Shown here one piece after another: positions 6,538 through 49,804 of a stretch of DNA of 64,000 bases; position 1 is the first letter of the stretch; every line of letters starts with the position of its first letter. The notes beneath the pieces are model-generated. The model searched no databases, was not told the DNA's origin, and was given only the letters and a program-made list of their open reading frames with translations. Both the position numbers and the translations under genes were made by a program. The DNA lies in contig NW_027361688.1 of the NCBI RefSeq assembly GCF_039654945.1, forward strand, positions 31,310,001 through 31,374,000. The letters run 5' to 3'. This DNA is from Dendrobates tinctorius. Taxonomy: Eukaryota.

Positions 6538-9324
6538 TGGGTCGCCCTCCCAGGGCTGTGGGGTACTCGGCACCGGGCCCGTTGATCTCAATGGGAGTTG
6601 TCACGGAAGCTGTGACCCGGTCCGTGGCCCTGAGGTTCCATGGCAAAAGGGGGTGCAAGAACAATGAAGTAGAATTGATGAATAGTTCGTGACGCCACCT
6701 GTGGTGCTCGGCAAGGGAGATGTTAAGCCGACGCTGCATTCAGATCCTCTGGGACTAGTGGTGTGCTGCAGCCAAGATGGTGAAGCTCCCCACAGGTGGA
6801 GCTGTAGTCCCAGGGCAGTGTGGATGTAGGGGTAGCTGAGAGGCACGGGCAGTGTAGAAGCTGGTACCCAGATGTAGCGGTAACAGGTGTGTTGGCGCAG
6901 GAATGAATGGATAGTCGCTTGGCAGCTAGCCCAGTTCTCGTCATCCCGAGACCGATCCAAACTAGTTTTGTACTGCGGCGCCACTGTCAGGGGTTCTGGT
7001 GTCCCCCCCCCGTGGGCTGGTATCCTGGTCCCAGACCAGATCTAATATGACCTGGCCAGCTGCTGCGACCGCGGTACACCCCAAGGCCTTCCCAGGTGCA
7101 GGGACATCAAATATACCCGGAGCCTCATGGCGGTGTGGGTTCTGCTCCGGTGCCGGTGGGAGCTGGCCGGTGGCAGCAGGCCGCGGTGGAGCGGATGGTG
7201 TCTCCAGGCCCACGGGGGCCTCTGGTGGGACCGGCGCAGCCGCGTCAGGTCCGGGCGGGAACTCCTCTTCCTCCGCTTTGGCTCCCGGGGCCTCATACAA
7301 TTCCTCCTGTGGCGGTAGCGACGGGGGCTTCGTATGCTGCCAGTGGTGTGATGGCAGCTGCAGGCTCCGTGGAGTCTGCCTGTGGAAGCCCCGGTGCAGC
7401 AGCGGCGGTTACCGCAGGTGTAGGCCCCTCCCGGGCATGCTGCCAGTTCAGCCTCTACAAGGCCTCCTGCCTCAGCCGCAAACATTGGGTGAACCGGGCA
7501 ATCTCCTCCTCCAGCTGCCGTCGATCCAGCCTAGAAGCAGGGTCCGAGCCTTCAGCCATGGCGCGGAGAGATCCAGCTCAACCTCCCTGCGTTCTGCAGG
7601 CCTCCTTCCCTCTTCTTCCATCATGGCGTTCTGGCGTATTTCTTCCTGTCTCTGCTCTTTTCCCGCCACTGGCTTCCGCTCCTCCTTCTTGGGGCGGCGT
7701 CTTCTTCCAACTCCTCCATACCAAGCCAGTATATGAACCCCTCGGGGGGTGGGCCATGTCGCTATTGCATGGTAATTCAGGCAGGGGAGGCCCAGGACAG
7801 TTTGCGGTCTTTTCTTAGGACCACCCATATGATCACGCCCTTCTTCTCCAGGCTGTCGGCCATTTTTAGTATTCATTTCACAGTCTATCAAATTGGGACT
7901 TCTGCACATTCTCAAAAGTTTTAAGTCCAACAAATCTTAGGCACACAGAACCCGATTGCATTGGGTCTCGTCATCCTGTTCGTGATGCCAGAATAGAGAA
8001 CCCCAGCCAGGGCTATTGGGGTACTCGGCACCGGGCCCGTTGATCTCACTGGGAGTTGTCACAGAAGCTGTGACCCGGTCCGTGGCCCTGGGGCTCCATG
8101 GCAAAAGGGGGTGCAAGAACAATGAAGTAGAATTGATGAATAGTTCGTGATGCCACATGTGGTGCTTGGCAAGGGAGATGTTAAGCCGACGCTGCATTCA
8201 GATCCTCTGGGACTGGTGGTGTGCTGCAGCCAAGATGGTGAAGCTCCCCACAGATGGAGCTGTAGTCCCGGGCAGTGTGGATGTAGGGGTAGCTGAGAGG
8301 CGCTGGCAGTGTAGAAGCTGGTACCCAGATGTAGCGGTAACAGGTGTGTTGGTGCAGGAATGAATGGAGGACACCGGGGCTTGTAGTTCCAAAGCTTTAC
8401 TCACAGTCTGTTGAACACACCGGTGCCTGCCTCCGTACTGTGTCCTCCGGGTCAGAGGCTCAATCAACCTCCAGGCCAGATGGAATGCTCCCTTCCAACG
8501 CTCCGCCAACATGTACCTTTCTGAATGTCTCCTCTTATAGCGCGTTTAAGTGTGAAGATCTCCTAGTACTGAGTTACACTGGAGTTCCTCCTGACAGATG
8601 CTCCCAAGAACTCTACTTGTACGGCAGACAGCTGTAGCCTGCTTCGGGGACTCCTTACTCCTGAATCCCGGCTCACTATCAATGTTGCTGTTGTGCCCCC
8701 AAGTCTTAGATGGGAGTAGTGCATTTACAGCCCACTACTCCACCGGTGTCTGCTGCAGAACCATTAGTGTCCATACAACCTCGGGGACCGGGCCCCGGCC
8801 TTGCGCTTAGAACTTCTAGGCAGGGTTCTTCCTCTAACCCACGTCCTCTGTTCCCTTTTACTCCTACGTTCCGTACTAGTCTTTCCTTCTTATGTAAGAT
8901 CAGGTTTCTGCTCAACGTCTTTCTCCTTCTTTCCTTTCCTGTGCCAGCTGGCTCATATCACTGAGGCAGCTGCAGCACGCCTTCCTCCATCCCTCTCTCC
9001 GGGATCTTCTTTCCTCACTCCTCTCTGAGTGACTCCCTCTCACTGACTGACTGACCTGAAATCCTACACCTTCCCGCTCTTTTATGTATTCTAAACTCCA
9101 CCCGCCTCCCAGCACGTTTCGTGTTCCAAGCAGGGAGTCACCAAAGGTGCTCTGCTACACTCCAAGCAGGGAGCCGCAATGTGGCTTTGCTGAACTACCG
9201 TGTTGTGTGGGTTGCGAGTGTTGGAGCGTGGTTTGGAGCCTCCAACTCACCTGGATGGTGGGGTACCACACCTCAGGAGGAGGTGCAGTACCTCTGTGGC
9301 AACTGAACACTCAGGGGCGCCACA
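6538..9324 (-). mobile_element. Non-autonomous LTR element (same family as 15579-23516), internally deleted
   Basis: TG...CA ends; 4-bp TSD CACC (6534-6537, 9325-9328); 5' LTR about 7994-9324; PBS at 7973-7990; partial 3' LTR 6538-6912. Confidence 0.85.
6915..7933 (-). pseudogene. Disrupted copy of the LTR-element internal ORF (lacks the cold-shock domain)
   Basis: GGPKKRPQTVLGLPCLNY..TWPTPRGV, MAEGSDPASRLDRRQLEEEIA and ALGCTAVAAAGQVILDLVWD match the 17020-18540 ORF; premature TAG; truncated by deletion. Confidence 0.75.
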
Positions 9325-9465
9325 CACCCATACGGTGAAAAAGGGGGGGGGAATACACGGGTGCTTACCGGTAGCCGGAAAAATCGGCTACCGGTAAGTA
9401 ACCATGGTGGTTTTCCCTTCACCCATGACAGCACACCTGAGAGATTTTTGGAGACTTCGAACACT

Positions 9466-10500
9466 TTAGGGAGGGACCACCGCTTGCAGCATCCTTCTAC
9501 CAAAGGTTAAGTCAGCAGAGGAGGATAGATTTAATCTATAGTGCTTAAAAAAAGTTGAAGGTGATGCCCAGGTAGCGGCCTTACAGATTTGCTCAATCGA
9601 TACCTCTGCCTTTTCAGCCCAGGTGGTCGCCACGGCTCTGGTGGAATGAGCCTTGATGCCGTCAGGAATCGGAACACCACTAGCTGAGTAGGCTACACTA
9701 ATAGCCTCCCTAATCCATCTGGCAATAGTCCCTTTTGATACTCCATAGCCCTTCCTGGCATCCTGAAAGGCTACAAATAGGGACAGGGACCTCCTCCACT
9801 GGCTAGTCACTGATATGTACTCTAAGAGGGCTTTTAATGTCTAGTTTATGGAATTTCTCCTCTCCTGGGTTTTTTGAATTCTCACAGAAGGAGGGGAGGA
9901 CAATCTCTTGGCTACGATGGGAATCTGATACAACTTTCGATAAATAAGCAGGGTCTGTTTTTAGGACAGCCCTGTCCTGGTACACCTGGGTATAAGGTGG
10001 ATTAACTGAGAGGGCCTGCAAGTCACTTACTCTACGGGCCGATGTAAGGGACACTAAAATAATGGTCTTTAGGGTGAGATATTTTACTGGTAGTTGTTGC
10101 ACCAGTTCAAATGGCTCTTTCGTGAGAGCTTCTAACACAAGGTTTAAATCCCAGGGAGCTATTTTTGGTAATGGGATTGGTTTAGACCTCTGGCAGGATT
10201 TAATGAATCTGGCCACCCATCTGTTTGCTGCTATGTTGCAGTTATATAGAGCGCCTAGTGCTGAAACCTGTACTTTAAGTGTATTTACTGCTGGACCTAG
10301 CTGTAGCCCCACCTGTAAGAATTCTAAGATGGCCTTAATCGGGGGTTCTTGGTCCAACAGTTTCCCTAGGAACTGCAGAAGCTTATTTCATGTTCTACCG
10401 TATATGTTAGTTGTTACTGGCTTTCTACTTTTCATCAGCGTAGCCACCAACCCAGGGGAGAACCCTCTATTTTTTAAAAGTGACCTCTCAAATTCCACGC
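9466..10500 (-). pseudogene. DIRS tyrosine recombinase, frameshifted
   Basis: ARRVSDLQAL (R), HSTRAVATTW (HxxR) and WASPSTFFKHY (Y) spread across ORFs 9466-9810, 9803-10357 and 10388-10894. Confidence 0.85.
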
Positions 10501-11625
10501 CGTCAGATGGAACCCCTTGACTTGCGTGTGGAATACCAGACCCTGAGCTAGCAGGTCTGGAATCTCTGGTAGTACCCATGGATCTGAGAGGGACATCATC
10601 TGCAGTAGTGAGAACCAGGGCCTTTTTGGCCAAAACGGGACTATTAGGATCACCCTGGCCTGATCTTCTCTTATTTTCTTCACCACTGCTGGGATTAGAG
10701 CTACTGGAGGAAAGGCATAACCCAGTTTGAAATTCCACGGAATTTGCAATGCGTCCACCGCCCATGGCTCTTCTTTTGGGTTTAGTGATCAGAATCTCTT
10801 TACCTGCCTGTTGCTTTTGTTGGCAAAGAGGTCTATTACCGGCTCTCCCCAGAGTTGTACTATTTTCTGGAACACTGAGTGATTTAGGACCCATTCTCCT
10901 TGCCTTAATGTGTTGCGGCTTAGGAAATCGGCTTGTATGTTCTCTACCCCTCTGATGTGTAGGGCCGTTAAAGAAAGTAGGTGTCGTTCTGCTCTGTAAA
11001 AAATTTTGCTGGTTTCGTTCATTAAGGAGTGTGACCTTGTCCCCCCCTGGTGGTTGATATATGCCACTGTCACTTTGTTGTCCGACATGATCTGGACATT
11101 GCGGCCTTCTAGGCTGGGAATAAGTTTTTTTTAAGGCTTTGTTTACTGCCTGTAGGTCTTTTAGGTTGGAAGATGCGTTTTGTTCTTGGTGGTCCCTGGG
11201 CTGCCTGTCCCCTCAGGTGCGCTCCCCACCCCGAGGAACTTGCGTCCGTCAGGATCACATCGGACACTGGTCTGTGCCACAATGTTCCTGCTACTAGGTC
11301 TGCCCTGTCTAACCACCATATGATAAGAGTTTTTGACTTGTAAGGAAAGTTCCAGCCTTCCTTCTAAACGTCCTCTTAGCAATTTCTGTGCTGATAGGAT
11401 CACTGCCTGCAGTTGACGGGTATGAAATTGTGCCCATCTGACCGCTGGAATACAGGCTGTCAAAGTGACTAGTAAGGACATCGCCTCTCTCAGGGTCATG
11501 TGAGGCTGGTCTATGGCGGTCAAGGTCATATTCCTCACCTTTTCCACTTTGGCCTCTGGTAAAAGACAAATTTGTTGTTCCGAGTCCAGGATAAATCCTA
11601 AAAATATTTGCCTTTTTAGGGGTTG
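10474..11625 (-). pseudogene. DIRS pol C-terminus (RT thumb, RNase H, N6-adenine methyltransferase-like), frameshifted
   Basis: SDNKVTVAYINHQGGTRS..ADFLSR, IDLFA and YAFPP motifs. Confidence 0.8.
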
Positions 11626-11629
11626 TGGT

Positions 11630-11945
11630 CAGTGGCAGATTATAATGAGGTCAATCTGGGCGGTAGCCCAGGGCCCAGTGGTGTGCCCCATTATAATCCG
11701 CCACCATAGCGCCACCCCCCCCCATGTACTGACCCTTTCCTCCCCTTCTCAGACCCACCGGCCACCGCAGCGCCAGCCCCTCACTGATAAATCCCTGCTC
11801 TGTGCGCACAGGACCTGTGATGAGGTCACAGGTGGGGAGGAGTCAGGGGTTACATGATCAGGGGTTTCAGTCAGAGGCCCCTGATCATGTGACCCCTGAT
11901 TCCTCCCCTCCTGTGACCTCATTACAGGTCCTGTGCACACAGCCA
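11630..11945. mobile_element. hAT-type MITE end with internal palindromes
   Basis: CAGTGGCAGATTATAATG start with an inverted copy at about 11689-11704; palindrome about 11800-11941. Confidence 0.5.
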
Positions 11946-12044
11946 TCAATGTATTGTATGCGGGACTCTGCTGTACTCGTTGTAATGGTGCTGGATGAGG
12001 GAAGTATGTGTGGGGTCAGGAGGGGCTTACAGGATGGATGTAGC

Positions 12045-13435
12045 TGCGTGTGTGTGCGAGGTGTACGGAGCAGAGCTGCGAATGTGCGAGGTGTATGGAG
12101 TGGAGCCGTGTGTGTACAAGGTGTACGGAGTGGAGCTGCGAATGTGCAAAGTGTACGGAGCGGAGCCGCTAATGTGCGAGGTGTACAGAGCGGAGCTGCA
12201 AATGTGCGAGGTGTACGGAGCAGAGCCGTGAGTGTACGAGGTGTGTGGAGCGGAGCCATGCGTGTACAAGGTGTACGGAGCGGAGCCGCGCACGGTGTAT
12301 GGAGCGGAGCCGTGCACGCGAGAGGTGTACGGAGTGGAGCCGCACGCGCGAGGTTTACAAGTTGTACGGAGCGGAGCCCTGTGTGTACAGAGCTGAGCTG
12401 TGCATGTGCGAGGTGTACGGAGCGGAGCCGCGTGTGTGTACGAGGTATACGGAGTGGAGCTGCATGTGTGTACGGAGCGAAGCCGCGTATGTGTACGAGG
12501 TGTACGGAACGGAGCCCTGTGTGTACAGAGCTGAGCTGCACGTGTGCGAGGTGTACAATGCGGGACTGCAAGTGTGCGAGGCGTACGGAGCGGAGCCGCG
12601 TGTGTGTACGAGGTGTAAGGAGTGGAGCCACGTGTGTACGAAGTGTACAGAGCGGAGCCGCATGTGTGTACGGAGCGAAGCCGCGTGTGTGTACGAGGTG
12701 TACGGAGCGAAGCCGCGTGTGTGTACGAGGTGTACAGAACGGAGTACTGTGTGTACAGAGCAGAGCTGCACGTGTGCGAGGTGTATGGAGCAGAGCCGTG
12801 TGTGTGTATGAGGTGTACGGAGGGGACCCGCGTGTGTACGAGGTGTATGGAGTGGAGCCGCATGTGTGTACGGAGCAGAGCCGCATGTGTGTACGGAGCG
12901 GAGCCGCATGTGTGTACGGAGCGAAGCCGCGTGTGTGTACGAGGTGTACGGAATGGAGTCCTGTGTGTACAGAGCTGAGCTGCACGTGTGCAAGGTGTAC
13001 GGAGTGGGGCTGCGCGTGTGCGAGGTGTACGGAGCGGAGCCACGTTTGTGCGGAGCCGCGTGTGTGTACGAGGGGTACGGAGCGAAGCCGCGTGTGTGTA
13101 CGGAGCGGAGCCGCATATGTACGATGTGTACGGAACAGAGCCCTGTGTGTACAAAACTGAGACATGTGTTTACAGAGCGGAGCCGCGTGTGTACGAGGTG
13201 TATGGAGCAAAGCCGCATGTGTACAAGGTTTACAGAGCAGAGCCATGTGTGTGCAAGGTGTACAGAGCGTGGCCGCATGTGTATAAGGTGTACGGATTGG
13301 AGCCACATGTGTACGAGGTTTACGGATTGGAGCCGTGTGTGTGCGAGGTGTACGGAGCGAAGCCGTGTGTACGAGGCATACAAAGCGGAACAGTGTGTGA
13401 ATGAGGTGTGCGGAGCCATGCGTGTACAAGGTGTA
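12045..13435. repeat. GT-rich minisatellite, 22-32 bp variant units (GTGTACGGAGCGGAGCCGCGTGTGTGTACGAG)
   Basis: Direct tandem repetition; accounts for the long low-complexity ORFs in several frames. Confidence 0.9.
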
Positions 13436-13447
13436 TGATGGGGAGCA

Positions 13448-14460
13448 TTCATACCTCCCAACCGTCCCAGATTTTGAGTGACTGCCCCGACTGGGAGCTT
13501 ACTTTTCCCGCGGACACAGGAGTATACGGCGGAGCCCCGAGGAGCACTAGAAAACTCGCACGTGACATTCCATCGGAAGTGACGTGCTGGATGCTGACCA
13601 GAGGAGATTGTTATGGAACCATGGAGGCACTTCAGGGAATGCTTCAGATCATCACCATATCCTCCTCCGACAGCGCGGACAGCGGGATTGTCTTGGACTC
13701 GGGGATGATGGCCATGCGAGTTTATCATAATATGTCCTGCACTAGGAGGCTCAGGTGGGCACTACAATGCGAGCCGGGCTGGTATAGTATCTTTATAGAA
13801 TCTTTCTTTCCCCTCTTTCCTTGTCTTTCATTCTTTCTTTCTTTCTTTCACTTGCTGTTTTTTCTTTCCCCTCTTTGTTTCTCTCTCCCTTTCTGTTCTT
13901 TCTTTTTTCTCTCTTTGTTCTTTCTTTCACCTCTTTCTTTCTCTTTCTTTCTCTCTTTGTTCCTTCTTTCCCCTCTTTCTTTCTCTCTCCCTCGCTGTTC
14001 CTTCTTTCTTTCCCCTTTCTTTCTTTTTCTCTCTCTGTTCTTTCTTTCCCTTTCTTTCTTTCTCTCCCTGCTCTTTCTTTCCCCTCTTTCTTTCTCTCTC
14101 CCTCTCTGTTCTTTCTTTCTTTCTTTCTTCTCTTTCTTTTTTTCTCTCGCTGTTCTTTTTTCTGTCCCCTCTTTCTTGCTCTCTGTTCTTTTTTCCTTTC
14201 TCTCTCTGTTTCTTCCTTCTTTCTCTGTTCTTTCTTTCTCTCTCCTTTTTTTCTCTCTCTTTTTCTTTTTTCTCTCTCTCTCTGTTGTATCTTTCTTTTC
14301 CTCAGTACCAGTCAATGTGCCCACAGTACCAGCCACTGTGCCCATAATGCCAGCCACTGTGCCCTCAGTACCAGTCAGTGTGATCAGCAGTGTTAAATAG
14401 GTGTGGTTGGGGCGTGGACATGGGTGTGACTAATTGTGAAATGGGTGTGGTCGGGCGGCC
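13448..14460. mobile_element. hAT-type MITE (CATACCTCCCAAC terminus) containing CT-rich microsatellite
   Basis: CATACCTCCCAACCGTCCC start; (CT/TTC)n tract at about 13800-14300; second TIR not found. Confidence 0.5.
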
Positions 14461-15392: not shown

Positions 15393-16950
15393 TTAACCCC
15401 TTCCCGCCCCTTGACGCACCGTATGCGTCATGAAAACTAGTGACTTCCCGACCCCGTCAAATGATCGGGGGGCCCACAGAGCCTGAACAGCCCGGGGCCC
15501 TGACTACCCTTAATCCACCCCTGGTTGTTGTCTTGACTTTTTGACATTCACCATCCAGCCAAGTCTCTGTAGGGTATCTGTGGCGCCCGTGAGGCTCAGT
15601 CGCCACAGAGGTACTGCACCTTCTCCTAAGGTGTAGTGCCCCACCACCTAGGTAAGTTGGGAACTCCTTTCCACCCTCCAACACCTGCATCCCCCACACA
15701 GGATAGTTCAGCACTGATCACATTGCGGCTCATGCTTAGAGGGTAGCAGAGCACGTCTGGTGATTCCTTGTTTCGTAACACGAGATGTGCTTGGAGGTGG
15801 GTGGAGTTGAGATCCATATAAAAGAGGGGGAAGGTTTAGAATTGCAGGTCAGTCAGGGGTAGTCCCAGAGAAGTAGAGCAGGCTGACAGAAGGTCAGTCT
15901 GACAGGAGGTCAGGCGAGAGGAGTTCAGTTCTGAAGTTAGTTTTGAGTTCAGTTTGAGTTCAGTTTAGAAAGAGTGCTGCAGCTGCCTCAGTGATCTGAG
16001 CCAGCTGGCACGGGAAAGGAACAGAAGGAGAAAGACGTAGAACTGCAACCTAAGCTTCCATAAGAGAGAGAAGGAACAGCGCGGAAAAAAGGAGTAGGAG
16101 AACAGAGAGGAGTTGTGGGTTGGAAGAGGAACCCTGCCTATAGGTTCTCAGCGCAAGGCCGGGGCCTGGTCCCCGAGGTTGTATGGACACTTATGGTTCT
16201 GCAGAAGACACCGGTGGAGTAGTGGGCTGTAAATGCACTACTCCCATCTAAAACTTGGGACACAACAGCAACACGGATAGAGAGCCGAGATCCATGAGGT
16301 CCCTGATCGGGCTACAGCTGTCTGTCATATAAGAAAGGTTCTAGGAACATCTGACAGGAGGAACTTCAGAGTAACCACGGTACTGGAGTTCTTCACACTG
16401 AAAGGCGCAATAGAGGAGTCGTTCAGGAAAGGCACATGTTGGCGGAGTGTTGGAGAGGAGAATCCTGACTTGCCCGGGAGGTTGATTGAATCTCTACCCC
16501 GAAGGACACGGCACGGAGGGAGGCACCAGTGGGTACCACGAACTGTGAGTAAAGCTTTGAAACTGCAAGCCCTGGTGTCCTCCATTCATTCGCCACTAAC
16601 ACCTTCAGCACCGCTACATCTGGGTATCGGCATCTATACCATTCTGCGCCTCTCCTCATCCATTGCACCTACACTGCCCTGGGACTACAGCTCCACCTGT
16701 GGGGAGCTACACCATCTTTGCTGCACCACACCATCAGTCTCAGTGGATCTGCATGCAGCGTTAGCTCAACATCTTACTTGCCAAACACCACAGGTGGCGT
16801 CACAAACTATTCACCATTAACTACATACACCACCATTGATATTGGGCGCCCAGGGCCACGGACCGGGTCACAGCTGCCGTGATACTATTCCTCTGACACC
16901 GGCCCGGTACCGAGTACCCCACAGCCCTGGGTGTGAGTGCGACCCAATTT

Positions 16951-16968
16951 TGGCGTCACGAACAGGAT
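16951..16968 (+). promoter_or_regulatory. Primer-binding site complementary to tRNA-Ser(CGA) 3' end
   Basis: TGGCGTCACGAACAGGAT, 4 nt after the LTR; reverse complement ATCCTGTTCGTGACGCCA matches a vertebrate tRNA-Ser(CGA) 3' end plus CCA (from memory); repeated at 20278-20295. Confidence 0.8.
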
Positions 16969-17019
16969 GACGAGACCCGATGCCATCAGGTTCTGTGCGT
17001 CTGAAATTTGTGAGACTTT

Positions 17020-18540
17020 GTGCTTTTGAAAATGTGCAGAAGACCTGATTTAATAGACTGTAAAATGGACATTAGAAATGGCTGCTGGCACGGAGAAGAA
17101 GGGCGTGAAGAGATGGGAGGTCCTAGGAAAAGACCGCGAAGAGTATTGGGCCTTCCCTGCCTGAATTACTATGTGACAGCGACATGGCCCACCCCCCGAG
17201 GGGTTCGTATACTGGCTTGGTATGGAGGCGCTGGAAGAAGACGCCGCCCCCGGAAGGAGGGGCAGAAGAAGCCAGTGGCGGGAAAGGGGCCGAGGCAGGA
17301 AGAAGAACGCCAGAACGCCATTTTGAAGAGTGAGGGAAGGAGGCCTGCGGAGCACGGGGAAACGGATCTTCCTGGCGCCATGGCTGACGGCTCCAACCCG
17401 AACTCCAGAATGAACCGCCAGCAACTGGAAGCCGAAATTGCTGAATTGACAGCCAGTCTGCAGCTGAGGAAGGATGCCTTAGAGAAGCTGAGACGGCAGC
17501 ACGCCCCGGCGGGGCCTACACCAGCGGTACCCTCTCCATCGGTACCTGCCGCTACCACACCGGACTGTCCCCGAGCAGCGCTGATCTATACGTCTACCCT
17601 GACTGTACGGCTGAGTGCCGCCTGCTCGAAGGAGTTACCGGAGGACCCAGGAGTGGAAGCGGAGCTCTCGCCCGGACCTGACATGGCTGCGCAGGTCCCC
17701 GCAGAGACCCCTGCGGATCCGGAGCCACCATCCGCTCCATCACCGCCTGCACCGGAGCAGAGGCCGCACCGCCCGGAGGCCCCAGGTATGTCGGATGTTC
17801 CTCCACCTGGGGAGGCCCTGGGGTGTACCGCAGTTGCAGCGGCTGGCCAGGTCGTCCTGGATTTGGTCTGGGACCGGGATGCCAGTGCCGTGGGTGAGGG
17901 CAGGTCCCGGGAAGAGCGGGAGGAAGAAGAGAGTTGGGCAGGATGTCGGGACACCATTCGACAGCTGGCAGCGGAATACCGGGAGAGAGAGCAGAGACAG
18001 AAGGCTGCGCTGGGCCCGGATCTGGCCCGGAAAGAGTGGGCCCGGGCTGGGCATCATGGTCCCCAGGATGCAGCTGGATGGAGGCAGGTGCTGAATGTAT
18101 GCCGAGAGAAGGGTTTCAGATTTATTGCGGTCCCCAAAAGAATCAGCGACCTGTTCTTTAACCGGCAGGATGTGGAGCCCCATCTGAGGAGGGGGCATCC
18201 TGATAGAGACCTGAAGCCTGGAGAGTATGTAACCTTCACCCGGCATGAGGGACTCTTGGGGTGGTGCGCCCTGAATATCCGCCGTATTCCGGAGTTTATT
18301 GAAAGGTACAAGCCAAAGAGACCTGTTGCTGCCCCTCCACCCACCGTTGCTACTCAGACTGCTCAGGTACCCAATCCTAGGAACCAGGCTGCTCTTGCAT
18401 CACCTGCAGTTCGGCAGCCCAAACCAAAGATCCCTGGCTTGACACCGTGGGAAGAGGAGTACTTAAGTATTGCCAACGACTACTTTGAATCTGGTAGCAG
18501 TTCCAGTTCTTCCAGAACCCCAGGAGGGGATCAGCACTAA
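17020..18540 (+). CDS. LTR-element ORF: basic N-terminus, coiled coil, Pro-rich linker, cold-shock domain
   Basis: Open 506-codon frame (ATG candidates 17064 and 17380). About 18076-18285 reads ..EKGFRFIAVPKRISDLFFNRQDV..LKPGEYVTFTRHEGLLGWCALNIR, matching the CSD pattern (KGFGFI..DVFVH..L.EG..VEF....KG..A.NV). Confidence 0.7.
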   Translation: MLLKMCRRPDLIDCKMDIRNGCWHGEEGREEMGGPRKRPRRVLGLPCLNYYVTATWPTPRGVRILAWYGGAGRRRRPRKEGQKKPVAGKGPRQEEERQNAILKSEGRRPAEHGETDLPGAMADGSNPNSRMNRQQLEAEIAELTASLQLRKDALEKLRRQHAPAGPTPAVPSPSVPAATTPDCPRAALIYTSTLTVRLSAACSKELPEDPGVEAELSPGPDMAAQVPAETPADPEPPSAPSPPAPEQRPHRPEAPGMSDVPPPGEALGCTAVAAAGQVVLDLVWDRDASAVGEGRSREEREEEESWAGCRDTIRQLAAEYREREQRQKAALGPDLARKEWARAGHHGPQDAAGWRQVLNVCREKGFRFIAVPKRISDLFFNRQDVEPHLRRGHPDRDLKPGEYVTFTRHEGLLGWCALNIRRIPEFIERYKPKRPVAAPPPTVATQTAQVPNPRNQAALASPAVRQPKPKIPGLTPWEEEYLSIANDYFESGSSSSSSRTPGGDQH

Positions 18541-20346
18541 AAATTCAAATCTCGTTACCCAGGAGGGTTTGTTTGCACCAGTTGTGCCTTCTTATTATCA
18601 TGTTTTTCTGGTAGCACTTTTGTTGCCATGGCAGCATTTTTCCCAATTTGAACTAGCGATCATGAACTTGGAGTGATCCAAAAACTTTTATTGTAAATAG
18701 TTGCGCCTCTTTAGGTGCCCTTTCTTGGTTTTACATATAGAGACACTTTGCAAAGATAATGTTTTTTCATGGACACTTTTCGAAGATGATGTCTACCTCA
18801 AAGGACACTGCAAGAAATCCCGGCTGGGAGCGGTGTCCAGCACTTACAAGAATAATTGTTGAATGTTTTACTGTGAAGTATTTGATAATGTGTTTTATAA
18901 GAGTATTAGTAACTGAGAAATGGCTTTTATAGAAGAATTAGGAATGTCTGATCTAGAGATGAGTGATGTGAATAAAGAATTGAAAGTAGACAGGTGACAG
19001 ACCAGGTATCTGCGGTCAGCGTCTTGCGTCTAGAAGAGTCAGTGAAAGTAGAAAAATAAATGTGCACTAGAGAAGGAAAGATGAGAGAAAATGTGTTAGA
19101 GAATAGCACTTTGAATTGAGAATTGCACTTAGAATTAAAAATTTTAGATGGAATTGTTTGTAACGTTCAAGATGAGTACCTCCTATACTAGGAAGATTAG
19201 TATAAGAAAGTTTGGTATGCATTGCAAAATGTTTGTATGTTTCTTTGCTGTCTACTTTGTTATCTTGCAGCCCGCGGACGTGCTGTGTTTAACGGGGGGG
19301 TATGTGGCGCCCCTGAGGCTCAGTCGCCACAGAGGTACTGCACCTTCTCCTAAGGTGTAGTGCCCCACCACCTAGGTAAGTTGGGAACTCCTTTCCACGC
19401 TCCAACACCTGCATCCCACGCACAGGATAGTTCAGCACTGATCACATTGCGGCTCATGCTTAGAGGGTAGCAGAGCACGTCTGGTGATTCCTTGCTTCGT
19501 AACACGAGATGTGCTGGGAGGTGGGTGGAGTTGAGATCCATATAAAAGAGGGGGAAGGTTTAGAATTGCAGGTCAGTCTGGGGGAGTCCCAGAGAAGTAG
19601 AGCAGGCTGACAGAAGGTCAGGCGAGAGGAGTTCAGTTCTGAAGTTAGTTTTGAGTTCAGTTTGAGTTCAGTTTAGAAAGAGTGCTGCAGCTGCCTCAGT
19701 GATCTGAGCCATCTGGCACGGGAAAGGAACAGAAGGAGAAAGACGCAGAACTGCAACCTAAGCTTCCATAAGAGAGAGAAGGAACAGCGCGGAACTAAGG
19801 AGTAGGAGAACAGAGAGTTGTGGGTTGGAAGAGGAACCCTGCCTATAGGTTCTCAGCGCAAGGCCGGGGCCTGGTCCCCGAGGTTGTATGGACACTTATG
19901 GTTCTGCAGCAGACACCGGTGGAGTAGTGGGCTGTAAATGCACTACTCCCATCTAAGACTTGGGACACAACAGCAACACGGATAGAGAGCCGGGATCCAG
20001 GAGGTCCCTGATCGGGCTACAGCTGTCTGTCATATAAGAAAGGTTCTAGGAACATCTGACAGGAGGAACGTCAGAGTAACCACGGTACTGGAGTTCTTCA
20101 CACTAAAAGGCGCAATAGAGGAGTCGTTCAAGAAAGGCACATGTTGGCGGAGTGTTGGAGAGGAGAATCCTGACTTGCCCGGCCACGGACCGGGTCACAG
20201 CTGCCGTGATACTATTCCCCTGACACCGGCCCGGTCCCGAGTACCCCACAGCCCTGGGTGTGAGGGCGACCCAATTTTGGCGTCACGAACAGGATGACGA
20301 GACCCGATGCCATCGGGTTCTGTGCATCTGAAATTTGTGAGACTTT

Positions 20347-21416
20347 GTGCTTTTGAAAATGTGCAGAAGACCTGATTTAATAGACTGTAAAATGGACATT
20401 AGAAATGGCCACTGGCGCACAGAAGAAGGGCGTGAAGAGATGGGAGGTCCTAGGAATAGACCACGAAGAGTATTGGGCCTTCCCTGCCTGAATTACTATG
20501 TGACAGCGACATGGCCCACCCCCCGAGGGGTTCGTATACTGGCTTGGTATGGAGGCGCTGGAAGAAGACGCCGCCCCCCGGAAGGAGGGGCAGAAGAAGC
20601 CAGTGGCGGGAAAGGGGACGAGGCAGGTAGAAGAACGCCATGATGAAGGAAGACGAGAAGTCAGAAGACCAGGGGGAGGAGAGGCCTCTTGCCCCTAGGC
20701 CGCCCATGCGGAGGCTGCGACCGCTGATACATCCTCAGCAGCGGCCGCCACCACCGCTCCGACACCCTTTACAGCGTCCGCCGCTGCCGCCAGGCCAGTG
20801 CTGTCATTGGATGCGGCCTGCCAGGAGAAGATACATGAGAGTTCCGGAGATTGTGGGACGGGAGCGGAGACCCAGCCCGAAGCCGGCGCAGCCACGCAGA
20901 CTCCTGCCTGCCTGTCCTGGTCCTGAGCCGGGACGGATAGAGCTACCGGCTGTACGACAGACAACCCTGGGGGTTGCAACTGCCATCATTCGCCATCCAG
21001 TGCCCCCGCAGGAGCCAGAACATCACCGGGAGGTAGCAGGTATGATGACTGCCCCTACCATGATCCTAGTATTAGGAGCCGCAGACAGAAACGGTCCAGT
21101 GATCGCGCCGACATCAGTGGGCGGCCACCAAATTGCCTTATACCCGCAGCAGCCGGCCATAGTACCATTTGCTATGATACCCCCTGCAGTCACGGAACAA
21201 CACCTATCGGTACCCGCTGCCGCTTTGGCCAAATCGCTGATGGCAGAAATATCGGCTGCAATCCCTGCAGAACCCCAAGTAACAGACTTATCTGCCACCA
21301 CAGTGTCTGCACAGGCAGCTGCTAATCTTATCCCTGAAGAGAATCAAGATAAAGATACCACATCTGGTAGCAGTTTCCAATTAGCTTCCAGAACCCCAGG
21401 AGGGGACCAGCATTAA
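20347..21416 (+). pseudogene. Second internal ORF variant (same N- and C-termini, unrelated Pro/Ala-rich middle), split by small indels
   Basis: Starts like the 17020 ORF and ends ..SRTPGGDQH*; an extra C and loss of an 8-bp repeat break it at about 20575-20640. Confidence 0.6.
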
Positions 21417-23516
21417 AAATAAGTTGTAAATCTCGTTACCCAGGAGGATTTGTTTGCACCGTTGTGCCTGTTTCTATTTTTGTTGTTATCATGTTTTTCT
21501 GGTAGCACTTTTGTTGCCTAACTTTTGCAGTGGCAGCGTTCTTCAATTTTGAACTACAATGATCATGAACTTGGAGTGTATCACAAACTCTCTTGTAAAT
21601 AGTTTGCGCCTCTTTAGGTGCTTTCTCTTGGTTTTACATAAGGACACTTTGCGAAGATGATGCTTTGCATGGACACTTTTCGAAGATGATGTCTACCTCA
21701 ATGGACACTGCAAGAAATCCCGGCTGGGAGCGGTGTCCAGCATTTACAAGAATCTTTGAGATGTTTTATTGTTGATAATGTGTTTTATAAGAGTATTAGT
21801 AACTGAGATGTTTTGATACAGAATTAAGAATAAAGAATTGAAAGTAGACAGGTGACGGACCAGGTACTTGTGGTTAGCGTCTTGCGTCTAGAAGAGACAG
21901 TGAAAGTAGAAAAATGATCAAGAAATGTGTACTAGAGAAGGAAAAGCTGAATAATACTGAAGTGATAGTGAGTTACAGACATTGGCACTTAGAATGAAAA
22001 ATTGCACTTTTGACTTGAAATTTAGATAGTTAAATAAGAATTGTTCGTAACGTTCAAGAATAAGTACCTCCTATACTAGGAAGTTTAGTATAAGAAAAGT
22101 TTGTTCTGTGTTGCAAAATTTTTGTATGTTTCTTTGCTGTCAACTTTGTTTACCTTGCTGCCCGCGGACGTGCTGTGTTTAACGGGGGGGGTATGTGGCG
22201 CCCCTGAGGCTCAGTCGCCACAGAGGTACTGCACCTTCTCCTAAGGTGTAGTGCCCCACCACCTAGGTAAGTTGGGAGCTCCTTTCCACACTCCAACACT
22301 CGCATCCCACACAACAGGGTAGTTCAGCACAACCACATTGAGGACTCTCTCTCCTCCTAGACATTAGGAGTGCCTTTGGTGGTTCCCTGCTTGGCACACT
22401 GGATGTGCTGGGAGGTGGGTGGAGTTGAGACCCATATAAAAGGTTGGGAAGGTTTAGAATTACAGATCAGTCTGAGATCAGATCAGTCTGGGTTGAGTCT
22501 GGACAGTCAGTCAGGAGAGTCTGAGGATGGGTCCGAGAGGAAGGAGATCCCTAGAAGAGGGAGAGAAGGAGTGCTGCAGCTGCCTCGGTGATCTGAGCCA
22601 GCTGGAATGGGAAAGGAACAAGAGAAAGACGTAGAACTGCAACCTAAGCTTCCATAGGAAAGAGAGACAAGTACGGAACGAAGGAGTAGAGAGAACAGAG
22701 AGGAGTTGTGGGTTGGAAGAGGAACCCTGCCTATAGGTTCTCAGAGCAGTATGGACACTTATGGTTCTGCAGCAGACACCGGTGGACTAGTTGGCTGTAA
22801 ATGCACTACTCTCAACTAAGACTCGGGGCACAACAGCAACTGAATAGAGAGCCAGGACTCCGGAGAAAGGGGTCCCCGACAGAGGCTACAGCTGTCTGCC
22901 ATGCGAATAGAATTGCTAGGAACATCTGACAGGAGGAACTCCAGAGTACCACGGTACTGGAGAGCTTCACACTAAAAGGCGCATTGGCGGAGTCGATCAG
23001 GAAAGGTACATGTTGGCGGAGTGTTGGAGAGGAGAGCCCTGACTTGCCCGGGAGGTTGACTGAGTCTCTGCCCCGGAGGACACGGCATGGAAGCGGGCAC
23101 CAGTGTGTACCACAAACTGTGAGTAAAGCGTTGAAACTGCAAGCCCTAGTGTCCTCCATTCATTTGCGCACTAACATCTTCAGCACCGCTACACCTGGGT
23201 ACCAATCCCCTCACCGCTTGTGCCTCTCCTCTAATCTTACATTCACACTGCCCTGGGACTACAGCTCCACCTGTGGGGAGCTACACCATCTTTGCTGCAC
23301 CATGTCATCAGTCCCAGTGGATCTGCATGCAGCGTTGGCTTAACATCTTACTTGCCAAACACCACAGGTGGCGTCACGAACTGTTCACATAAACTATATC
23401 ACAAACCACCATTGATTTGGGCGCCCAGGGCCACGGACCGGGTCACCGCTGCTGTGACACATCCCACTGACACCGGCTCAGTACCGAGTACCCCACGGCC
23501 CTGGGAGGGCGACCCA

Positions 23517-25907
23517 GTATCACTATCTGAGGAGGAGGACATGTGCTCGGCCTGATAGTCGGACGAGGAAGAGTCTGATGAGGAACTTGGGGAGTCTCTA
23601 CTTTTTTTTCCTTTTTCTTTAATAACATTAAGTGAGCCTTCTACCTCGGACCTTATGACTGATCTGAGGTTAGTTGCCAGGCTCTGCACCTCCTCCGCCA
23701 TAGTTCGCTGGATACAGCTGGCGCAAAGGTCCTTTTGCCAATCTCTCGCTAGGGGGCTCTGGCATATAGCACACGCTATTATTTTTCTTGCTCCTTGCTT
23801 TTTTGCCTTTTCCCTAAGGAAAAAATAACACACAAGAAGGACCCTATTAATATTGGTCTAACTTTCACGAAGATTACTCACCACCCACAAAGTAGGATAC
23901 TGGACACGGAGGCTGTGTTGGAGCATGTGGTCTGTCCTCTCTCGATCTGTGGCTCGGGCGGCTACTGCTTTTGCCGCTTGAACAGCTGCCATGTGGGTCG
24001 CCCTCCCAGGGCTGCGGAGGTACTCGGTATTGGGCCGGTGTCAGTGGGATGTGTCACAGCAGAGGTGACCCGGACCGTGGCCCTGGGCGCCCAAGTAATG
24101 GGGGAATGTAGTTAATGGAATAGTTTGTGACGCCACCTGTGGTGTTCGGCAAGGGAGGTGTTAAGCCGACGCTGCAAACAGATCCTCCAGGACAGATGGT
24201 GTAGTGCAGCAATGATGGTATAGCCCTCCACAGGCAGGGCTGTTATCCCAGGGCAGTGTAGATGTGGGGACACTTAGGTGGTGTAGTGTCCAGCGCAGGG
24301 GATGTAGCAGTGTCAGGCAGACAGACGCAGGAAGGAATGGAGGACACCAGAGCATGTAGTTCCAAAGCTTTACTCACAGTCAGTAGTGCCCGCTTCTGTG
24401 CCGTGTCCCCCCCGGGTCAGGGACTCAGTCAACCCCCATGCAAGATGGAAAGCTCCCCTCCAACAACACTCCGCCAACTTATGTGCCTTTTCTGAACGTC
24501 TCCTCTATAGCACCTTTAAGTGTGAAGATCTCCAGTACTGTGGTACACTGGAGTTCCTCCTGTCAGATGTTCAAGAACCTACTGGTACGGCAGACAGCTG
24601 TAGCCTGCTTCGGGGACTCCCTTCTCCTGAGTCCCGGCTCTCTATCCGATTGCTGTTGTGCCCCAAGTCTTCGATGGGAGTAGAGCATTTACAGCCAGCT
24701 ACTCCACCGGTGTCTGCTGCAGAACCGTAAGTGTCCATACAACCTTGGGGACCGGGCCCCGGCCTTGTGCTGAGCACCCATAGGCAGGGTTCCTCTTCTA
24801 ACCCACGTCCTCTCTAGTCCTTCGTTCTGTATTTGTCCTTCTTTCTTATGGAAGCTTAGGTTTCAGTTCTACATCTTTCTCCTTCTGTTCCTTTCCTGTG
24901 CCAGCTGGCTCAGATCCCTGAGGCAGCTGCAGCACTCCTTCTTCCAGGGATCCTCACTCCTGTCTGAGTGACTTCCTACCCGACTGACCTTCTGTCAGAC
25001 TGAACCTCACATCCTACACTTTCCCACTCTTTTATGTATCTTAACTCCACCCACCTCCCAGCACATCCAGTGATCCAAGCAGGGAACCACCAAAGGTGCT
25101 CTGCTACCCTCTGAGCATGAAGCCGCAATGTGGCTGTGCAGAACCACCCCGTTGTGTGGGGTGCGAGTGTTGGAGTGTAGAAAGGGAGTTCCCACCTTAC
25201 CTGGATGGTGGGGTACCACACCTTGGAAAGAGAGCAAGGGGCAGTACCCCTGTGGCGACTGAGCCCCAGGGGGTGCCACATATGCTTATGTGCAGAGGTC
25301 TGCGATGGGGCAGAGACGCTGAACGCTCCTGCTGTGACCCCATTGTATGACCTGGCCGCCCTGCTCCTCATCCTCCTTTAAGTAGGTGCATCCGATGAGC
25401 GCTCTCTTCCCCTCCCCCCTGCGACCGCCATTCTTACTGCAGCCGGCGCCGCACCAGGCTCCATCTTGCTGTCGCATCTGTGACATCAGTCGGCGCACGC
25501 CCAGGGGGCACCGCGCCGCTGACGTCAGACACCAGTAACCACCCTCAACTTTCCCTGTCGTCCCAGGGAGAAGGATCGGGTGTGCGAAGGGGGGACGGAG
25601 GCACAGAGGAGCGCCCCGCTGCCGAGGCCTGCCTTACCGCACAAACCCGGGGCCTGCAGGAGGATCCCCGGGGACTGCACTTCCAGGCCACCGACAGCTG
25701 GTGCTGCAGGTAAGCAGACCTGCTCTTCCTGCGCCGGGACAGCCCTGGGTCCATCTTCTTCCATGACAGGCACCAACACTGTCAGACTGGGATCCCGTTC
25801 CAGGGCAGGAACCCAACTGAAGGGGGGAGAGGTGCCACCCCTTATATTTCAGTTGGTTCCTGTCCTGGCGGATCCCTCTCTCAGGTGTGCTGTCATGGGT
25901 GAAGGGA
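23517..25907 (-). mobile_element. DIRS1-like copy 1, 5' part (5' ITR and ORF1 start), interrupted by solo LTR
   Basis: CAICQSPLARDWQKDLCASCIQRTMAEE matches copy 2 ORF1; ITR at about 25800-25907. Confidence 0.8.
23994..25280 (-). mobile_element. Solo LTR of the same LTR family
   Basis: TGGGTCGCCC...GTGCCACA; flanks CATG/TATG (empty site CCATGCTT in DIRS copy 2 at about 30558). Confidence 0.85.
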
Positions 25908-26268
25908 AAACCACCATGGTTACTTACCGGTAGCCGGTTTTTCCGGAACCCATGACAGCACCACCTGAGAGAGGGATCCGCCCCGCCAGGACAGGAACCT
26001 ACTGAGACATAAGGGGCGGCACCTCTCCCCCGCTTCAGTTGGGTTACAGAGCATTGAGAGGACTTCCCGGTTAGTTACATGTTTAATCCAACACCACAAC
26101 ACTCAAAACACCCTACTAATTGTGCACACCCATACAGTGAAAAAGGGGGGGAATGTACGGGTGCTGTCATGGGTTCCAGAAAAACCGGCTACCGGTAAGT
26201 AACCATGGTGGTTTTCCCTTCACCCATGACAGCACCACCTGAGAGATTTTTGGAGACTTCGAAACACC

Positions 26269-27699
26269 TTAGGGAGGGACCACCGCTTGCAGCACCCTTC
26301 TACCAAAGGTTAAGTCAGCAGAGGAGGATAGATTTAATCTATAGTGCTTAAAGAAGGTTGAAGGTGAGGCCCAGGTAGCGGCCTTACAAATCTGTTCGAT
26401 TGATACCTCTGCCTTTTCAGCCCAGGAGGTCGCCACGGCTCTGGTGGAATGAGCCTTGATGCCGTCAGGAATCGGGATACCACTAGCTGAATAGGCTACA
26501 CTAATGGCTTCCCTAATCCATCTAGCAATAGTCCCTTTTGAAACCCCATAGCCTTTCCTGGCACCCTGAAAAGCTACGAATAGGGACTGTGACCTCCTCC
26601 ACTGGCTAGTGGCAGATATATATTCTACGAGAGCCCTTTTAACATCCAGACTATGGAATTTTTCCTCCCCCAGATTTTTTGGATTTTCGCAAAAGGATGG
26701 AAGGACAATTTCCTGACCCCGATGGAAATCTGATACTACCTTGGGCAGATAACTGGGGTCTGTTCTTAAAACTACCCTATCCTGAAAGACTTGCGTGTAA
26801 GGAGGATTTACTGAGAGAGCCTGTAAGTCGCTTATCCTGCGGGCTGATGTGAGGGCTACTAACAGGATTGTTTTTAGGGTCAAGAACTTTAGGGGTAGCT
26901 GATGTAATGGCTCATACGGATCTTTTGTAAGGGCTTCTAACACCAGGTTTAAATCCCAGGGGGCTATTCTGGGTATTGGAATAGGCTTAGCTCTATGGCA
27001 GGATTTAATAAATCTGGCTATCCACCTATCTGATGCCAGTTTGCAATTGTAGAGCGCCCCTAGTGCCGACACCTGAACCTTAAATGTGTTTACTGCTAAC
27101 CCCATCTGCAACCCAGATTGTAAGAACTCTAGGATGGCCCTAATCGGGGGTTCTTTTCCTAACGGCTTACCCAAGAACTGTAGGAACTTATCCCATGTTC
27201 TGCCGTAGATGTTAGTAGGCACCGGTTTCCTGCTTTTTAGCAGAGTGGCCACCAGCCCAGGGGAGAACCCCCTATCCATTAAAAGCGACCTTTCAAATTC
27301 CACGCCGTCAGATGGAATCCTTTGACCTGAGCGTGCAATATTGGACCCTGAGCTAGTAGGTCCGGGATTTCTGGCAGAACCCATGGATCGAAGAGGGACA
27401 TCTTCCGTAGCAGAGCAAACCAGGGCCTTTTTGGCCAGAATGGAGCTATTAGAATCACCCTGGCTTGATCGTTTCTGATTTTTCTTACCACAGTTGGGAT
27501 CAGAGCTACTGGGGGGAACGCGTAAGCCAGTCTGAAGTTCCACTGGATGTGCAACAAGTCCACTGCCCATGGATTTTCCCTCGGGTTTAGAGAGCAGAAC
27601 CTTTCTGTTTGCCTGTTGTGCTTGTTTGCAAAGAGGTCTATCACCGGTTCCCCCCAAAGCTGAATTATCTTTTGAAAAATGGACCGGTTTAGCGCCCAT
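26269..27699 (-). CDS. DIRS tyrosine recombinase
   Basis: Open frame with ARRISDLQAL, HSLDVKRAL, HSTRAVATSW and WASPSTFFKHY; overlaps pol. Confidence 0.9.
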   Translation of the reverse strand: MGAKPVHFSKDNSALGGTGDRPLCKQAQQANRKVLLSKPEGKSMGSGLVAHPVELQTGLRVPPSSSDPNCGKKNQKRSSQGDSNSSILAKKALVCSATEDVPLRSMGSARNPGPTSSGSNIARSGQRIPSDGVEFERSLLMDRGFSPGLVATLLKSRKPVPTNIYGRTWDKFLQFLGKPLGKEPPIRAILEFLQSGLQMGLAVNTFKVQVSALGALYNCKLASDRWIARFIKSCHRAKPIPIPRIAPWDLNLVLEALTKDPYEPLHQLPLKFLTLKTILLVALTSARRISDLQALSVNPPYTQVFQDRVVLRTDPSYLPKVVSDFHRGQEIVLPSFCENPKNLGEEKFHSLDVKRALVEYISATSQWRRSQSLFVAFQGARKGYGVSKGTIARWIREAISVAYSASGIPIPDGIKAHSTRAVATSWAEKAEVSIEQICKAATWASPSTFFKHYRLNLSSSADLTFGRRVLQAVVPP

Positions 27700-49615: not shown

Positions 49616-49618
49616 TAA

Positions 49619-49790: not shown

Positions 49791-49804
49791 TAAAGCTTCG
49801 TGAC

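What the first reader, a model, noticed from the sequence alone, without database searches (positions are those of the whole stretch)
17020..21416. Exchangeable ORF cassette: same LTR backbone and ORF termini, unrelated middles
Seen: both internal regions share the PBS leader, an N-terminal peptide of about 95 aa (GGPR.RP..VLGLPCLNY..ATWPTPRGV.ILAWYGG.GRRRRP), the last codons (S..SRTPGGDQH*) and about 750 bp of AT-rich 3' region. Between them, 17320-18490 (coiled coil + CSD) and 20645-21360 (Pro/Ala-rich) show no similarity by eye. The N-terminal peptide is also kept in the diverged minus copy (7933-7620). Inference: the family acts as a vector with a variable in-frame cargo slot, and the conserved N-terminus may be an undescribed domain.
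Basis: partly seen in the sequence, partly recalled or inferred. Interest (0 to 1): 0.7.

Follow-up and report, generated by a model that had tools for sequence, protein, structure and literature searches.

The report
Frog LTR element with swapped ORF
Two neighbouring copies of a helper-dependent frog retroelement share their control regions, start codon and last 17 codons but carry unrelated protein-coding middles, while the supposed shared "N-terminal peptide" is untranslated leader RNA.

Summary
The coordinates and most of the observation hold. The + strand carries LTR1, body A, LTR2, body B and LTR3 (15579-23516).

- **Shared parts.** A and B share a ~370-nt leader (96.7% identical), an ATG site, the last 17 codons plus the stop, and ~0.8 kb of AT-rich 3' region (79%).
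- **Middles.** 17334-18488 and 20654-21361 show no similarity above shuffled controls. Each is open in the frame linking the shared start to the shared tail (0 of 5000 shuffles), and each shows strong 3-base periodicity.
- **N-terminal peptide.** This is not protein. It lacks periodicity and frame-specific dN/dS. In B it is out of frame with the ORF, and no homologue has it.
- **Body A.** It is the usual cargo of this family, a coiled coil plus a cold-shock domain. Its only homologues are four poison-frog proteins. Two of these lie between LTRs that are 99.5-100% identical, with no pol.
- **Body B.** It is Pro/Ala/Arg-rich, predicted disordered, and has no homologues. Related contigs 85-88% identical exist elsewhere in the genome.

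The best reading is an ORF replacement by recombination within a non-autonomous LTR family. A general "cargo slot" remains untested, because this rests on two bodies at one locus. The scan has noted this cold-shock LTR family before on other DNA of this genome.

The parts
15579..16946 (+). LTR1 (1368 bp, TGTGG...ACCCA). GTATC at 15574-15578 repeats the 5 nt found after LTR3.
   Evidence: about 97.5% identical to LTR2 without gaps, 83% to LTR3
16947..17319 (+). Leader of unit A. It holds a primer-binding-site-like TGGCGTCACGAACAGGAT at 16951-16968.
   Evidence: (same PBS in L003). RNA fold z = -2.1.
17320..18540 (+). ORF A, the family's usual cargo. The start-site hexamer at 17320-17325 is not ATG in this copy, and the first in-frame ATG after it is 17380. 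A helix lies at about 17398-17508 and the cold-shock domain at 18103-18285. The body unrelated to B is about 17334-18488.
18489..18540 (+). Shared ORF tail of unit A: the last 17 codons and the stop.
18541..19302 (+). AT-rich 3' region of unit A (GC 0.38 measured over 18489-19297, which includes the tail). It has a block conserved across genera at about 18659-18734 and a G-run polypurine tract at 19294-19300.
19303..20273 (+). LTR2, shared by both units. It lacks the equivalent of LTR1 16478-16853.
20274..20639 (+). Leader of unit B. It is 96.7% identical to leader A, with +1 and -8 nt length differences that put its open frame out of register with ORF B.
20640..21416 (+). ORF B, 258 codons, starting at ATGATG. 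The unrelated body is about 20654-21361: Pro 17%, Ala 12%, Arg 9%, with a basic N-terminal half and predicted disorder. The shared tail is 21362-21416.
21417..22193 (+). AT-rich 3' region of unit B, with the conserved block at about 21585-21640 and a G-run at 22184-22191.
22194..23516 (+). LTR3, a different subfamily (83% to LTR1, 78% to LTR2). It is followed by GTATC at 23517-23521.
6538..9326 (-). Diverged A-type copy on the minus strand. It has a 5' LTR from about 9326 to 7995, a leader at 7994-7625, ATGATG at 7624, and an ORF remnant aligned to A through 17885 with frameshifting indels. The cold-shock domain and 3' region are deleted. A 3' LTR remnant lies at 6911-6538.

Best explanation
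This is a three-LTR, two-body composite of a non-autonomous LTR retroelement family of poison-frog-type genomes.

Each unit keeps the sequences that a helper element's reverse transcriptase and integrase need in cis. These are the LTR, a primer-binding site, a ~370-nt leader (probably the packaging or dimerisation region), a ~0.8-kb AT-rich 3' region with a conserved block, and a G-run polypurine tract. A single ORF sits between them.

Unit A has the family's normal ORF, a helical region followed by a cold-shock domain. By inference this is an RNA-binding protein that coats or chaperones the element's own RNA, much as LINE-1 ORF1p or retroviral nucleocapsid do.

Unit B keeps the same start site and the same last 17 codons and stop. 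Its 236-codon body is unrelated, proline/alanine/arginine-rich and predicted disordered.

The '95-aa N-terminal peptide' is the untranslated leader, conserved as nucleic acid.

By inference, the B body arose by recombination inside the ORF. This could be template switching between co-packaged RNAs or capture of another repeated sequence. It survived because the reading frame from start to stop was kept.

The local array itself is a mosaic. LTR1, its leader, LTR2 and its leader form one young lineage. The B body, its 3' region and LTR3 form a lineage about 20% diverged from it.
For: Shown:
- Anatomy and identities.
- No RT or integrase in either body. Pfam finds only a weak CSD hit.
- The only homologues of A in 1.84 billion representatives are four dendrobatid proteins, and they match only A residues 218-461. 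All five family members hit Pfam CSD, best E = 3.3e-9.
- In Phyllobates and Anomaloglossus the ORF lies alone between 1247-bp and 1284-bp LTRs that are 100% and 99.5% identical. The Anomaloglossus copy has a clear 5-bp target duplication (GGCCC) and the same PBS as the window. The Phyllobates copy has a different PBS and an ambiguous 4-bp-like flanking repeat.
- The leader is non-coding.
- Both bodies are coding-like. Each is open in 0 of 5000 dinucleotide shuffles. Periodicity is p = 1e-8 for A and 3e-8 for B, against 0.76, 0.16 and 0.84 for the leader, 3' region and LTR.
- The A body has frame-specific dN/dS of 0.48, against 0.80 and 1.10 in the other frames.
- The bodies are unrelated.
- The minus copy has a comparably diverged backbone (LTR 78%, leader 84%) yet still aligns through the A body at about 72%. 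B is therefore replaced, not merely diverged.
- Distinct contigs 85-88% identical to the B body at 20765-21275 show that it is multi-copy.
Against: - There is only one B-type copy in the window, and no contig shown bridges the leader/B or B/tail junction. Whether B-type elements transpose as such is therefore unknown.
- Some B-like contigs stop aligning before 20765 or after 21275. The B core may therefore belong to another repeat.
- No source gene or homologue for B was found, so 'capture' is inference.
- The history of the array fits no simple model. GTATC flanks both ends, but the outer LTRs are only 83% alike. The right flank is DIRS-like gag homology ending exactly at 23517, while the left flank is not DIRS-like.
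- The structure model of A is of low confidence (pLDDT 51).
Confidence: 0.55

Rival explanations
1. A and B are complementary in-frame deletion products of one longer ancestral ORF, laid out as start, A part, B part, tail (or the reverse order). Nothing was swapped or captured.
For: - Both bodies keep the same start and the same tail in frame.
- Internal deletions occur in this family. The minus copy lacks the cold-shock domain and the 3' region. The Ranitomeya copy L001 lacks the LTR end and the leader.
- The N-terminal halves of the frog homologues are long, Pro/Ala-rich and cannot be aligned between species.
Against: - No longer ORF was seen. The four homologues (245-481 aa) and their loci show no similarity to B.
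- The two deletions would have to be exactly complementary, leaving no shared remainder.
- One deletion would have to start about 14 nt after the ATG, and the other would have to end exactly at the tail.
Confidence: 0.17
2. The family really is modular. The conserved start and tail delimit a slot that has repeatedly taken up different proteins. The cold-shock domain, the Pro/Arg-rich B body and perhaps the FXR1-like cargo noted elsewhere in this genome would each serve as the element's own RNA-binding adaptor.
For: - Two unrelated coding-like bodies lie between identical junctions.
- The N-terminal half of B is strongly basic (pI 11.4).
- Unchecked scan notes report LTR elements with FXR1-like RNA-binding cargo in the same genome.
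Against: - Only two bodies at one locus were examined.
- It was not shown that the FXR1-type elements use this backbone. Sequence look-ups returned nothing.
- B has no recognisable domain and is predicted disordered.
Confidence: 0.13
3. Unit B is a local accident. Post-insertion recombination, nested insertion with deletion, or an assembly chimera in a repeat-dense region joined an A-type LTR and leader to an unrelated repeat. On this reading the B ORF has no role in the element.
For: - The identity pattern is mosaic, 96-97% on the 5' side and 78-83% on the 3' side.
- The surroundings are dense with transposons, including DIRS-like copies, a solo LTR and another LTR copy.
- The flanks are inconsistent with a simple insertion.
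Against: - The B body runs exactly from the family's start site to the family's tail, in frame.
- It is open in 0 of 5000 shuffles and has codon periodicity of p = 3e-8. An unrelated filler sequence would not be expected to show this.
Confidence: 0.15

Closest known systems
Non-autonomous LTR retroelements mobilised by a helper (mouse ETn/MusD and VL30, plant LARD/TRIM and BARE2). Named from general knowledge, not tested here.
   Same: They have LTRs, a PBS, a polypurine tract and a leader but no pol or integrase of their own. Their internal regions vary through deletion and recombination.
   Different: This family keeps a conserved ORF of its own, a cold-shock-domain protein that is neither retroviral gag nor pol. 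Here that ORF is replaced between a fixed start and a fixed tail.
Retroviral transduction producing in-frame fusions (acute transforming retroviruses with gag-onc fusions). Named from general knowledge.
   Same: Internal coding sequence is replaced by foreign sequence, while the 5' start, the cis signals and the reading frame are kept.
   Different: No host source for the B body was found. The retained coding ends are only about 5 and 17 codons long. The element is endogenous and non-autonomous.
Complex LTR retrotransposons with three LTRs and two internal domains (PMC1950507, Sabot & Schulman 2007; the recombination model is cited there)
   Same: The layout is LTR, body, LTR, body, LTR with a shared middle LTR, and there is a matching 5-bp repeat at both ends.
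   Different: The template-switch model predicts that the two outer LTRs are the most alike. Here they are 83% identical, while LTR1 and LTR2 are about 97.5% identical. The two bodies also differ.
LTR retrotransposons that capture additional ORFs (bdelloid rotifers, PMC5408684; title and abstract seen only)
   Same: LTR elements carry ORFs that are not gag or pol and are shared or exchanged between element types.
   Different: Those elements are autonomous and add ORFs to gag-pol. Here the captured-type ORF is the only ORF.
LINE-1 ORF1p as a functional analogue of ORF A (general knowledge)
   Same: A helical or coiled-coil region is followed by a small nucleic-acid-binding domain, encoded by the retroelement's own RNA.
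   Different: The fold is different (cold-shock OB fold rather than RRM), the element class is different, and no biochemical evidence exists.

Membership tests
LTR retroelement (retrovirus-like) | Direct long terminal repeats with TG...CA ends | tested here: met
   LTR1, LTR2 and LTR3 begin TGTGG and end ACCCA. The same holds in L003.
LTR retroelement (retrovirus-like) | A primer-binding site just after the 5' LTR and a polypurine tract just before the 3' LTR | tested here: met
   TGGCGTCACGAACAGGAT lies 4 nt after LTR1 and LTR2 and is identical in the young Anomaloglossus copy. G-runs of 7-8 nt lie 2 nt before LTR2 and LTR3. The primer tRNA was not identified.
LTR retroelement (retrovirus-like) | Target-site duplication of fixed length | tested here: inconclusive
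   GTATC flanks the whole array, and L003 has a 5-bp GGCCC. However, L002 and the minus copy fit 4 bp better, and the array's two flanks do not look contiguous.
Autonomous retrovirus or LTR retrotransposon | Encodes reverse transcriptase and integrase | tested here: not met
   No such Pfam domain occurs in any frame piece of A or B. The only RT in the window belongs to a separate DIRS-like element.
Cold-shock domain proteins (Pfam PF00313) | Match to the CSD profile above threshold | tested here: inconclusive
   The window copy scores E = 0.018-0.025 (15 bits, cut-off 27). All five aligned family members hit CSD, best E = 3.3e-9. The family qualifies, but this decayed copy alone does not.
   Two bodies share the junctions at one locus. 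The B body is multi-copy, but no junction-bridging contigs were shown.
   It has no periodicity and no frame-specific dN/dS. It is out of frame in B, absent from the homologues, and interrupted by stops in the L003 leader.
Complex LTR element made by template switching (PMC1950507) | Flanking target duplication together with outer LTRs that are the most similar pair | tested here: not met
   A 5-bp repeat is present, but the outer LTRs are 83% identical against about 97.5% for LTR1 and LTR2.

The most novel reading that the evidence does not exclude
The family is a modular, helper-dependent retroelement. Its single ORF is an interchangeable 'self-adaptor' slot bounded by a fixed start and a fixed 17-codon tail. 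Different RNA-binding or disordered proteins (cold-shock domain, the basic Pro/Arg-rich B body, possibly FXR1-like modules) have been swapped in and each propagated. Alternatively, any long ORF ending at that stop is kept because translation up to the conserved 3' block protects the RNA from decay.
Probability: 0.13. Interest if true: 0.75.

Novelty: new variant of a known kind. Interest (0 to 1): 0.42.

Why it matters
Non-autonomous LTR elements are usually thought to need only cis signals. This frog family keeps its own non-retroviral ORF in very young copies across several genera. At this locus that ORF has been replaced, frame intact, by an unrelated one.

If the replacement recurs genome-wide, it would show that such parasites-of-parasites can exchange the protein they encode while keeping their nucleic-acid signals. 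It would also give a natural system for asking what a self-encoded RNA-binding protein contributes to hijacking a helper.

If it does not recur, this locus is an ordinary recombinant in a repeat-rich genome.

The practical lesson for annotation is that the open, highly conserved leader mimics an N-terminal domain but is not one.

Tried and rejected
- **Word-index protein searches.** Searches with A, with B and with a five-sequence profile gave nothing new.
- **Other searches with B.** Pfam on every long frame piece of B found only one weak chance hit (Peptidase_S49, E = 0.077) on a minus-strand piece. The ESM Atlas feature search returned only sub-threshold hits of 0.77-0.78.
- **Structure of B.** AlphaFold2 predicts disorder, pLDDT 44.6 from a single sequence, so no fold search was run.
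- **Structure of A.** The model is too weak for a fold search.
- **Homology just after the start.** B seemed by eye to resemble A and the minus copy for about 15-30 codons after the ATG. Shuffle tests rejected this.
- **DIRS-like element as helper.** The neighbouring DIRS-like element was considered as the autonomous partner because its 3' part abuts an LTR twice. It was rejected because it has its own terminal repeats and a tyrosine-recombinase-type tail, read by eye (Pfam found no family in that piece), and the LTRs look like insertions into it.
- **One-step origins of the array.** Integration of an LTR circle by a single crossover, and the template-switch model, were both considered. Neither fits the LTR identity pattern.
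- **Contig joint 17883 to 21392.** This probably reflects the minus copy itself, not a propagating deletion variant.
- **Contig depth.** The depths were not used to rank copy numbers, as the tool warns against it.
- **Earlier scan notes and RNA searches.** Sequence look-ups in earlier scan notes were blank. Rfam and tRNA scans of the window found nothing.
Full report
**What is there**

A self-comparison of the window and inspection of the junctions give a + strand array.
- LTR1 is 15579-16946 and internal region A is 16947-19302.
- LTR2 is 19303-20273. It lacks the equivalent of LTR1 16478-16853.
- Internal region B is 20274-22193 and LTR3 is 22194-23516.

The LTRs begin TGTGG and end ACCCA. 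A primer-binding-site-like TGGCGTCACGAACAGGAT follows 4 nt after LTR1 and LTR2. A run of 7-8 G lies 2 nt before LTR2 and LTR3.

A diverged copy lies on the minus strand.
- Its LTR runs from about 9326 to 7995 and its internal region is 7994-6912.
- A 3' LTR remnant lies at 6911-6538.

Another LTR lies on the minus strand at about 25278-23994.

**Check of the observation**

- LTR end plus leader, 16854-17312 against 20181-20640, is 96.7% identical.
- The 3' similarity starts at 18489/21362 and runs through the 3' regions into the LTRs at 78.9%.
- The 3' regions have GC 0.38.
- The last 17 codons and the stop are shared in the same frame, with one 3-nt length difference.
- Between about 17334-18488 and 20654-21361 there is no similarity. 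The local alignment score is 17, against 14.1 +/- 2.0 for shuffles. blastp finds only the 8-residue tail, and tests just downstream of the start are also negative.

**The N-terminal peptide is not protein**

- In B the leader differs from A by +1 nt and -8 nt. Its open frame therefore ends at a stop at 20641-20643 and is out of frame with ORF B.
- Differences between A and the minus copy in 17020-17312 fall 11/19/17 at codon positions 1/2/3.
- dN/dS there is 0.62 in the proposed frame, against 0.73 and 0.56 in the other two frames. The ORF body (17312-17890) gives 0.48, against 0.80 and 1.10.
- Codon-position composition is flat in the leader (p = 0.76), as it is in the LTR (0.84) and the 3' region (0.16). 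It is strongly periodic in ORF A (1e-8) and ORF B (3e-8).
- An exhaustive HMMER search of 1.84 billion representatives with the 506-aa ORF matched only residues 218-461.
- The Anomaloglossus leader has three in-frame stops before its ATG.
- The leader is nevertheless the best-conserved DNA of the element. It is 84% identical between A and the minus copy, against about 72% in the ORF and 78% in the LTR. It folds slightly better than shuffles (z = -2.1).

I read it as the untranslated leader, probably a packaging or dimerisation region. That last step is inference.

**The ORFs**

B and the minus copy have GCC-ATG-ATG at the leader/body boundary (20640 and 7624). Copy A does not have ATG at the corresponding site (17320), and its first in-frame ATG after that is 17380. 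From that site to the shared stop, both bodies are open. None of 5000 dinucleotide-preserving shuffles of either body is open in that frame.

*ORF A.* It has helices followed by five strands in a low-confidence model (pLDDT 51). Pfam gives a weak CSD match (E about 0.02).

Its only homologues are four proteins, from Ranitomeya variabilis, R. imitator, Phyllobates terribilis and Anomaloglossus baeobatrachus. All hit Pfam CSD, best E = 3.3e-9.

In P. terribilis and Anomaloglossus the ORF lies alone between 1247-bp and 1284-bp LTRs that are 100% and 99.5% identical. In Anomaloglossus the PBS is the same as here and the target duplication is 5 bp. The LTR ends, the PBS region and the polypurine region of the window match those loci at 70-79%.

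Body A is therefore the normal cargo of a recently active, pol-less LTR family of poison frogs. The scan has noted this family many times on other DNA of this genome.

*ORF B.* It is 258 codons long.
- Composition is Pro 17%, Ala 12% and Arg 9%.
- The N-terminal 110 residues have pI 11.4.
- It is predicted disordered.
- It has no Pfam match and no homologue.
- It has no similarity to A, to the frog homologues or to their loci.

Public contigs of the same species include several distinct pieces 85-88% identical to 20765-21275. One piece is identical. The B body is therefore repeated in the genome. None of the pieces shown bridges the junctions to the leader or the tail.

**Replaced, not just diverged**

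The minus copy's backbone is about as far from A as B's is. Its LTR is 78% and its leader 84% identical to A, against 79% for B's 3' region. Yet its ORF still aligns with A through 17885 at about 72%. At that distance a homologous B body would still be alignable.

**History of the array**

- LTR1 and LTR2 are about 97.5% identical without gaps. LTR3 is 83% identical to LTR1 and 78% to LTR2.
- LTR1, leader A, LTR2 and leader B are therefore one young lineage. The B body, its 3' region and LTR3 are another.
- GTATC flanks both ends of the array (15574-15578 and 23517-23521), which would suggest one integration.
- However, the template-switch model for three-LTR elements predicts that the outer LTRs are the most alike (PMC1950507). 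They are not.
- The right flank is the gag start of a DIRS-like element, and its homology ends exactly at 23517. The left flank is not DIRS-like.

I could not resolve the order of events. Post-insertion recombination in a repeat-dense region is likely.

**Mechanism proposed**

- *Shown:* a pol-less LTR family keeps its cis signals and one ORF, and at this locus the ORF body has been exchanged in frame.
- *Inferred:* the cold-shock protein binds the element's RNA and helps it use a helper's particles.
- *Inferred:* the B body entered by recombination inside the ORF and was kept because the frame stayed open.

Rivals are complementary deletions of a longer ORF, a truly modular slot, or a local accident.

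**Comparison and novelty**

Helper-dependent LTR elements, in-frame transduction and three-LTR composites are all known. An LTR family whose only gene is a cold-shock-domain protein did not turn up in two full-text searches. An in-frame exchange of that gene is a new variant, here supported by a single locus.

Noticed in passing
window 26125-31202 (-) and 9323-11626 (-): Two copies (77.7% identical) of a DIRS-like retroelement. It has a gag with a LAP2alpha-type domain (E = 4.6e-13), an RT, and a C-terminal piece that looks by eye like a tyrosine recombinase (Pfam found no family in it). The first copy has direct repeats at 31202-30571 / 25921-25293 and at 30485-30071 / 23925-23513.
   Followed up: partly
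window 23994-25278 (-): An apparently solo LTR of the same family sits between the two halves of the DIRS-like element's 3' repeat. Its length accounts for the extra spacing there.
   Followed up: partly
window 18659-18734 and 21585-21640; L001 9280-9331; L004 8557-8611: A block of about 55 nt lies shortly after the ORF stop. It is conserved at 80-85% between this genome and the two Ranitomeya loci (L001, L004) and includes a small GCACCT...AGGTGC hairpin. It may be a cis-acting RNA element.
   Followed up: partly
L001 7217-12094: This is a Ranitomeya variabilis copy annotated by NCBI as a gene. The 5' LTR is cut short and joined 4 nt before the ATG, with no PBS or leader. The 3' LTR is longer.
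   Followed up: partly
L002 7186-7210 versus L003 7735-7760 and window 16951-16968: The Phyllobates copy has a different primer-binding site (TGGCGTAGTCGGCAGGAT) from the Anomaloglossus and window copies. Related elements in the family therefore seem to use different primer tRNAs.
   Followed up: no
window 11800-14400: G-rich arrays of roughly 30-bp and 42-bp tandem units give long open frames on both strands (up to 514 aa). They are probably satellite DNA, not genes.
   Followed up: no
window 49115-49618, 49802-50115 and 2226-3169: There are near-perfect long palindromes, with arms of 247 nt and 155 nt at 99% separated by 4-10 nt, and arms of 237-367 nt at 97-100%. They may be foldback elements or assembly artefacts.
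   Followed up: no
window 37344-37913: A tandem array of 79-bp units, 82-86% alike.
   Followed up: no
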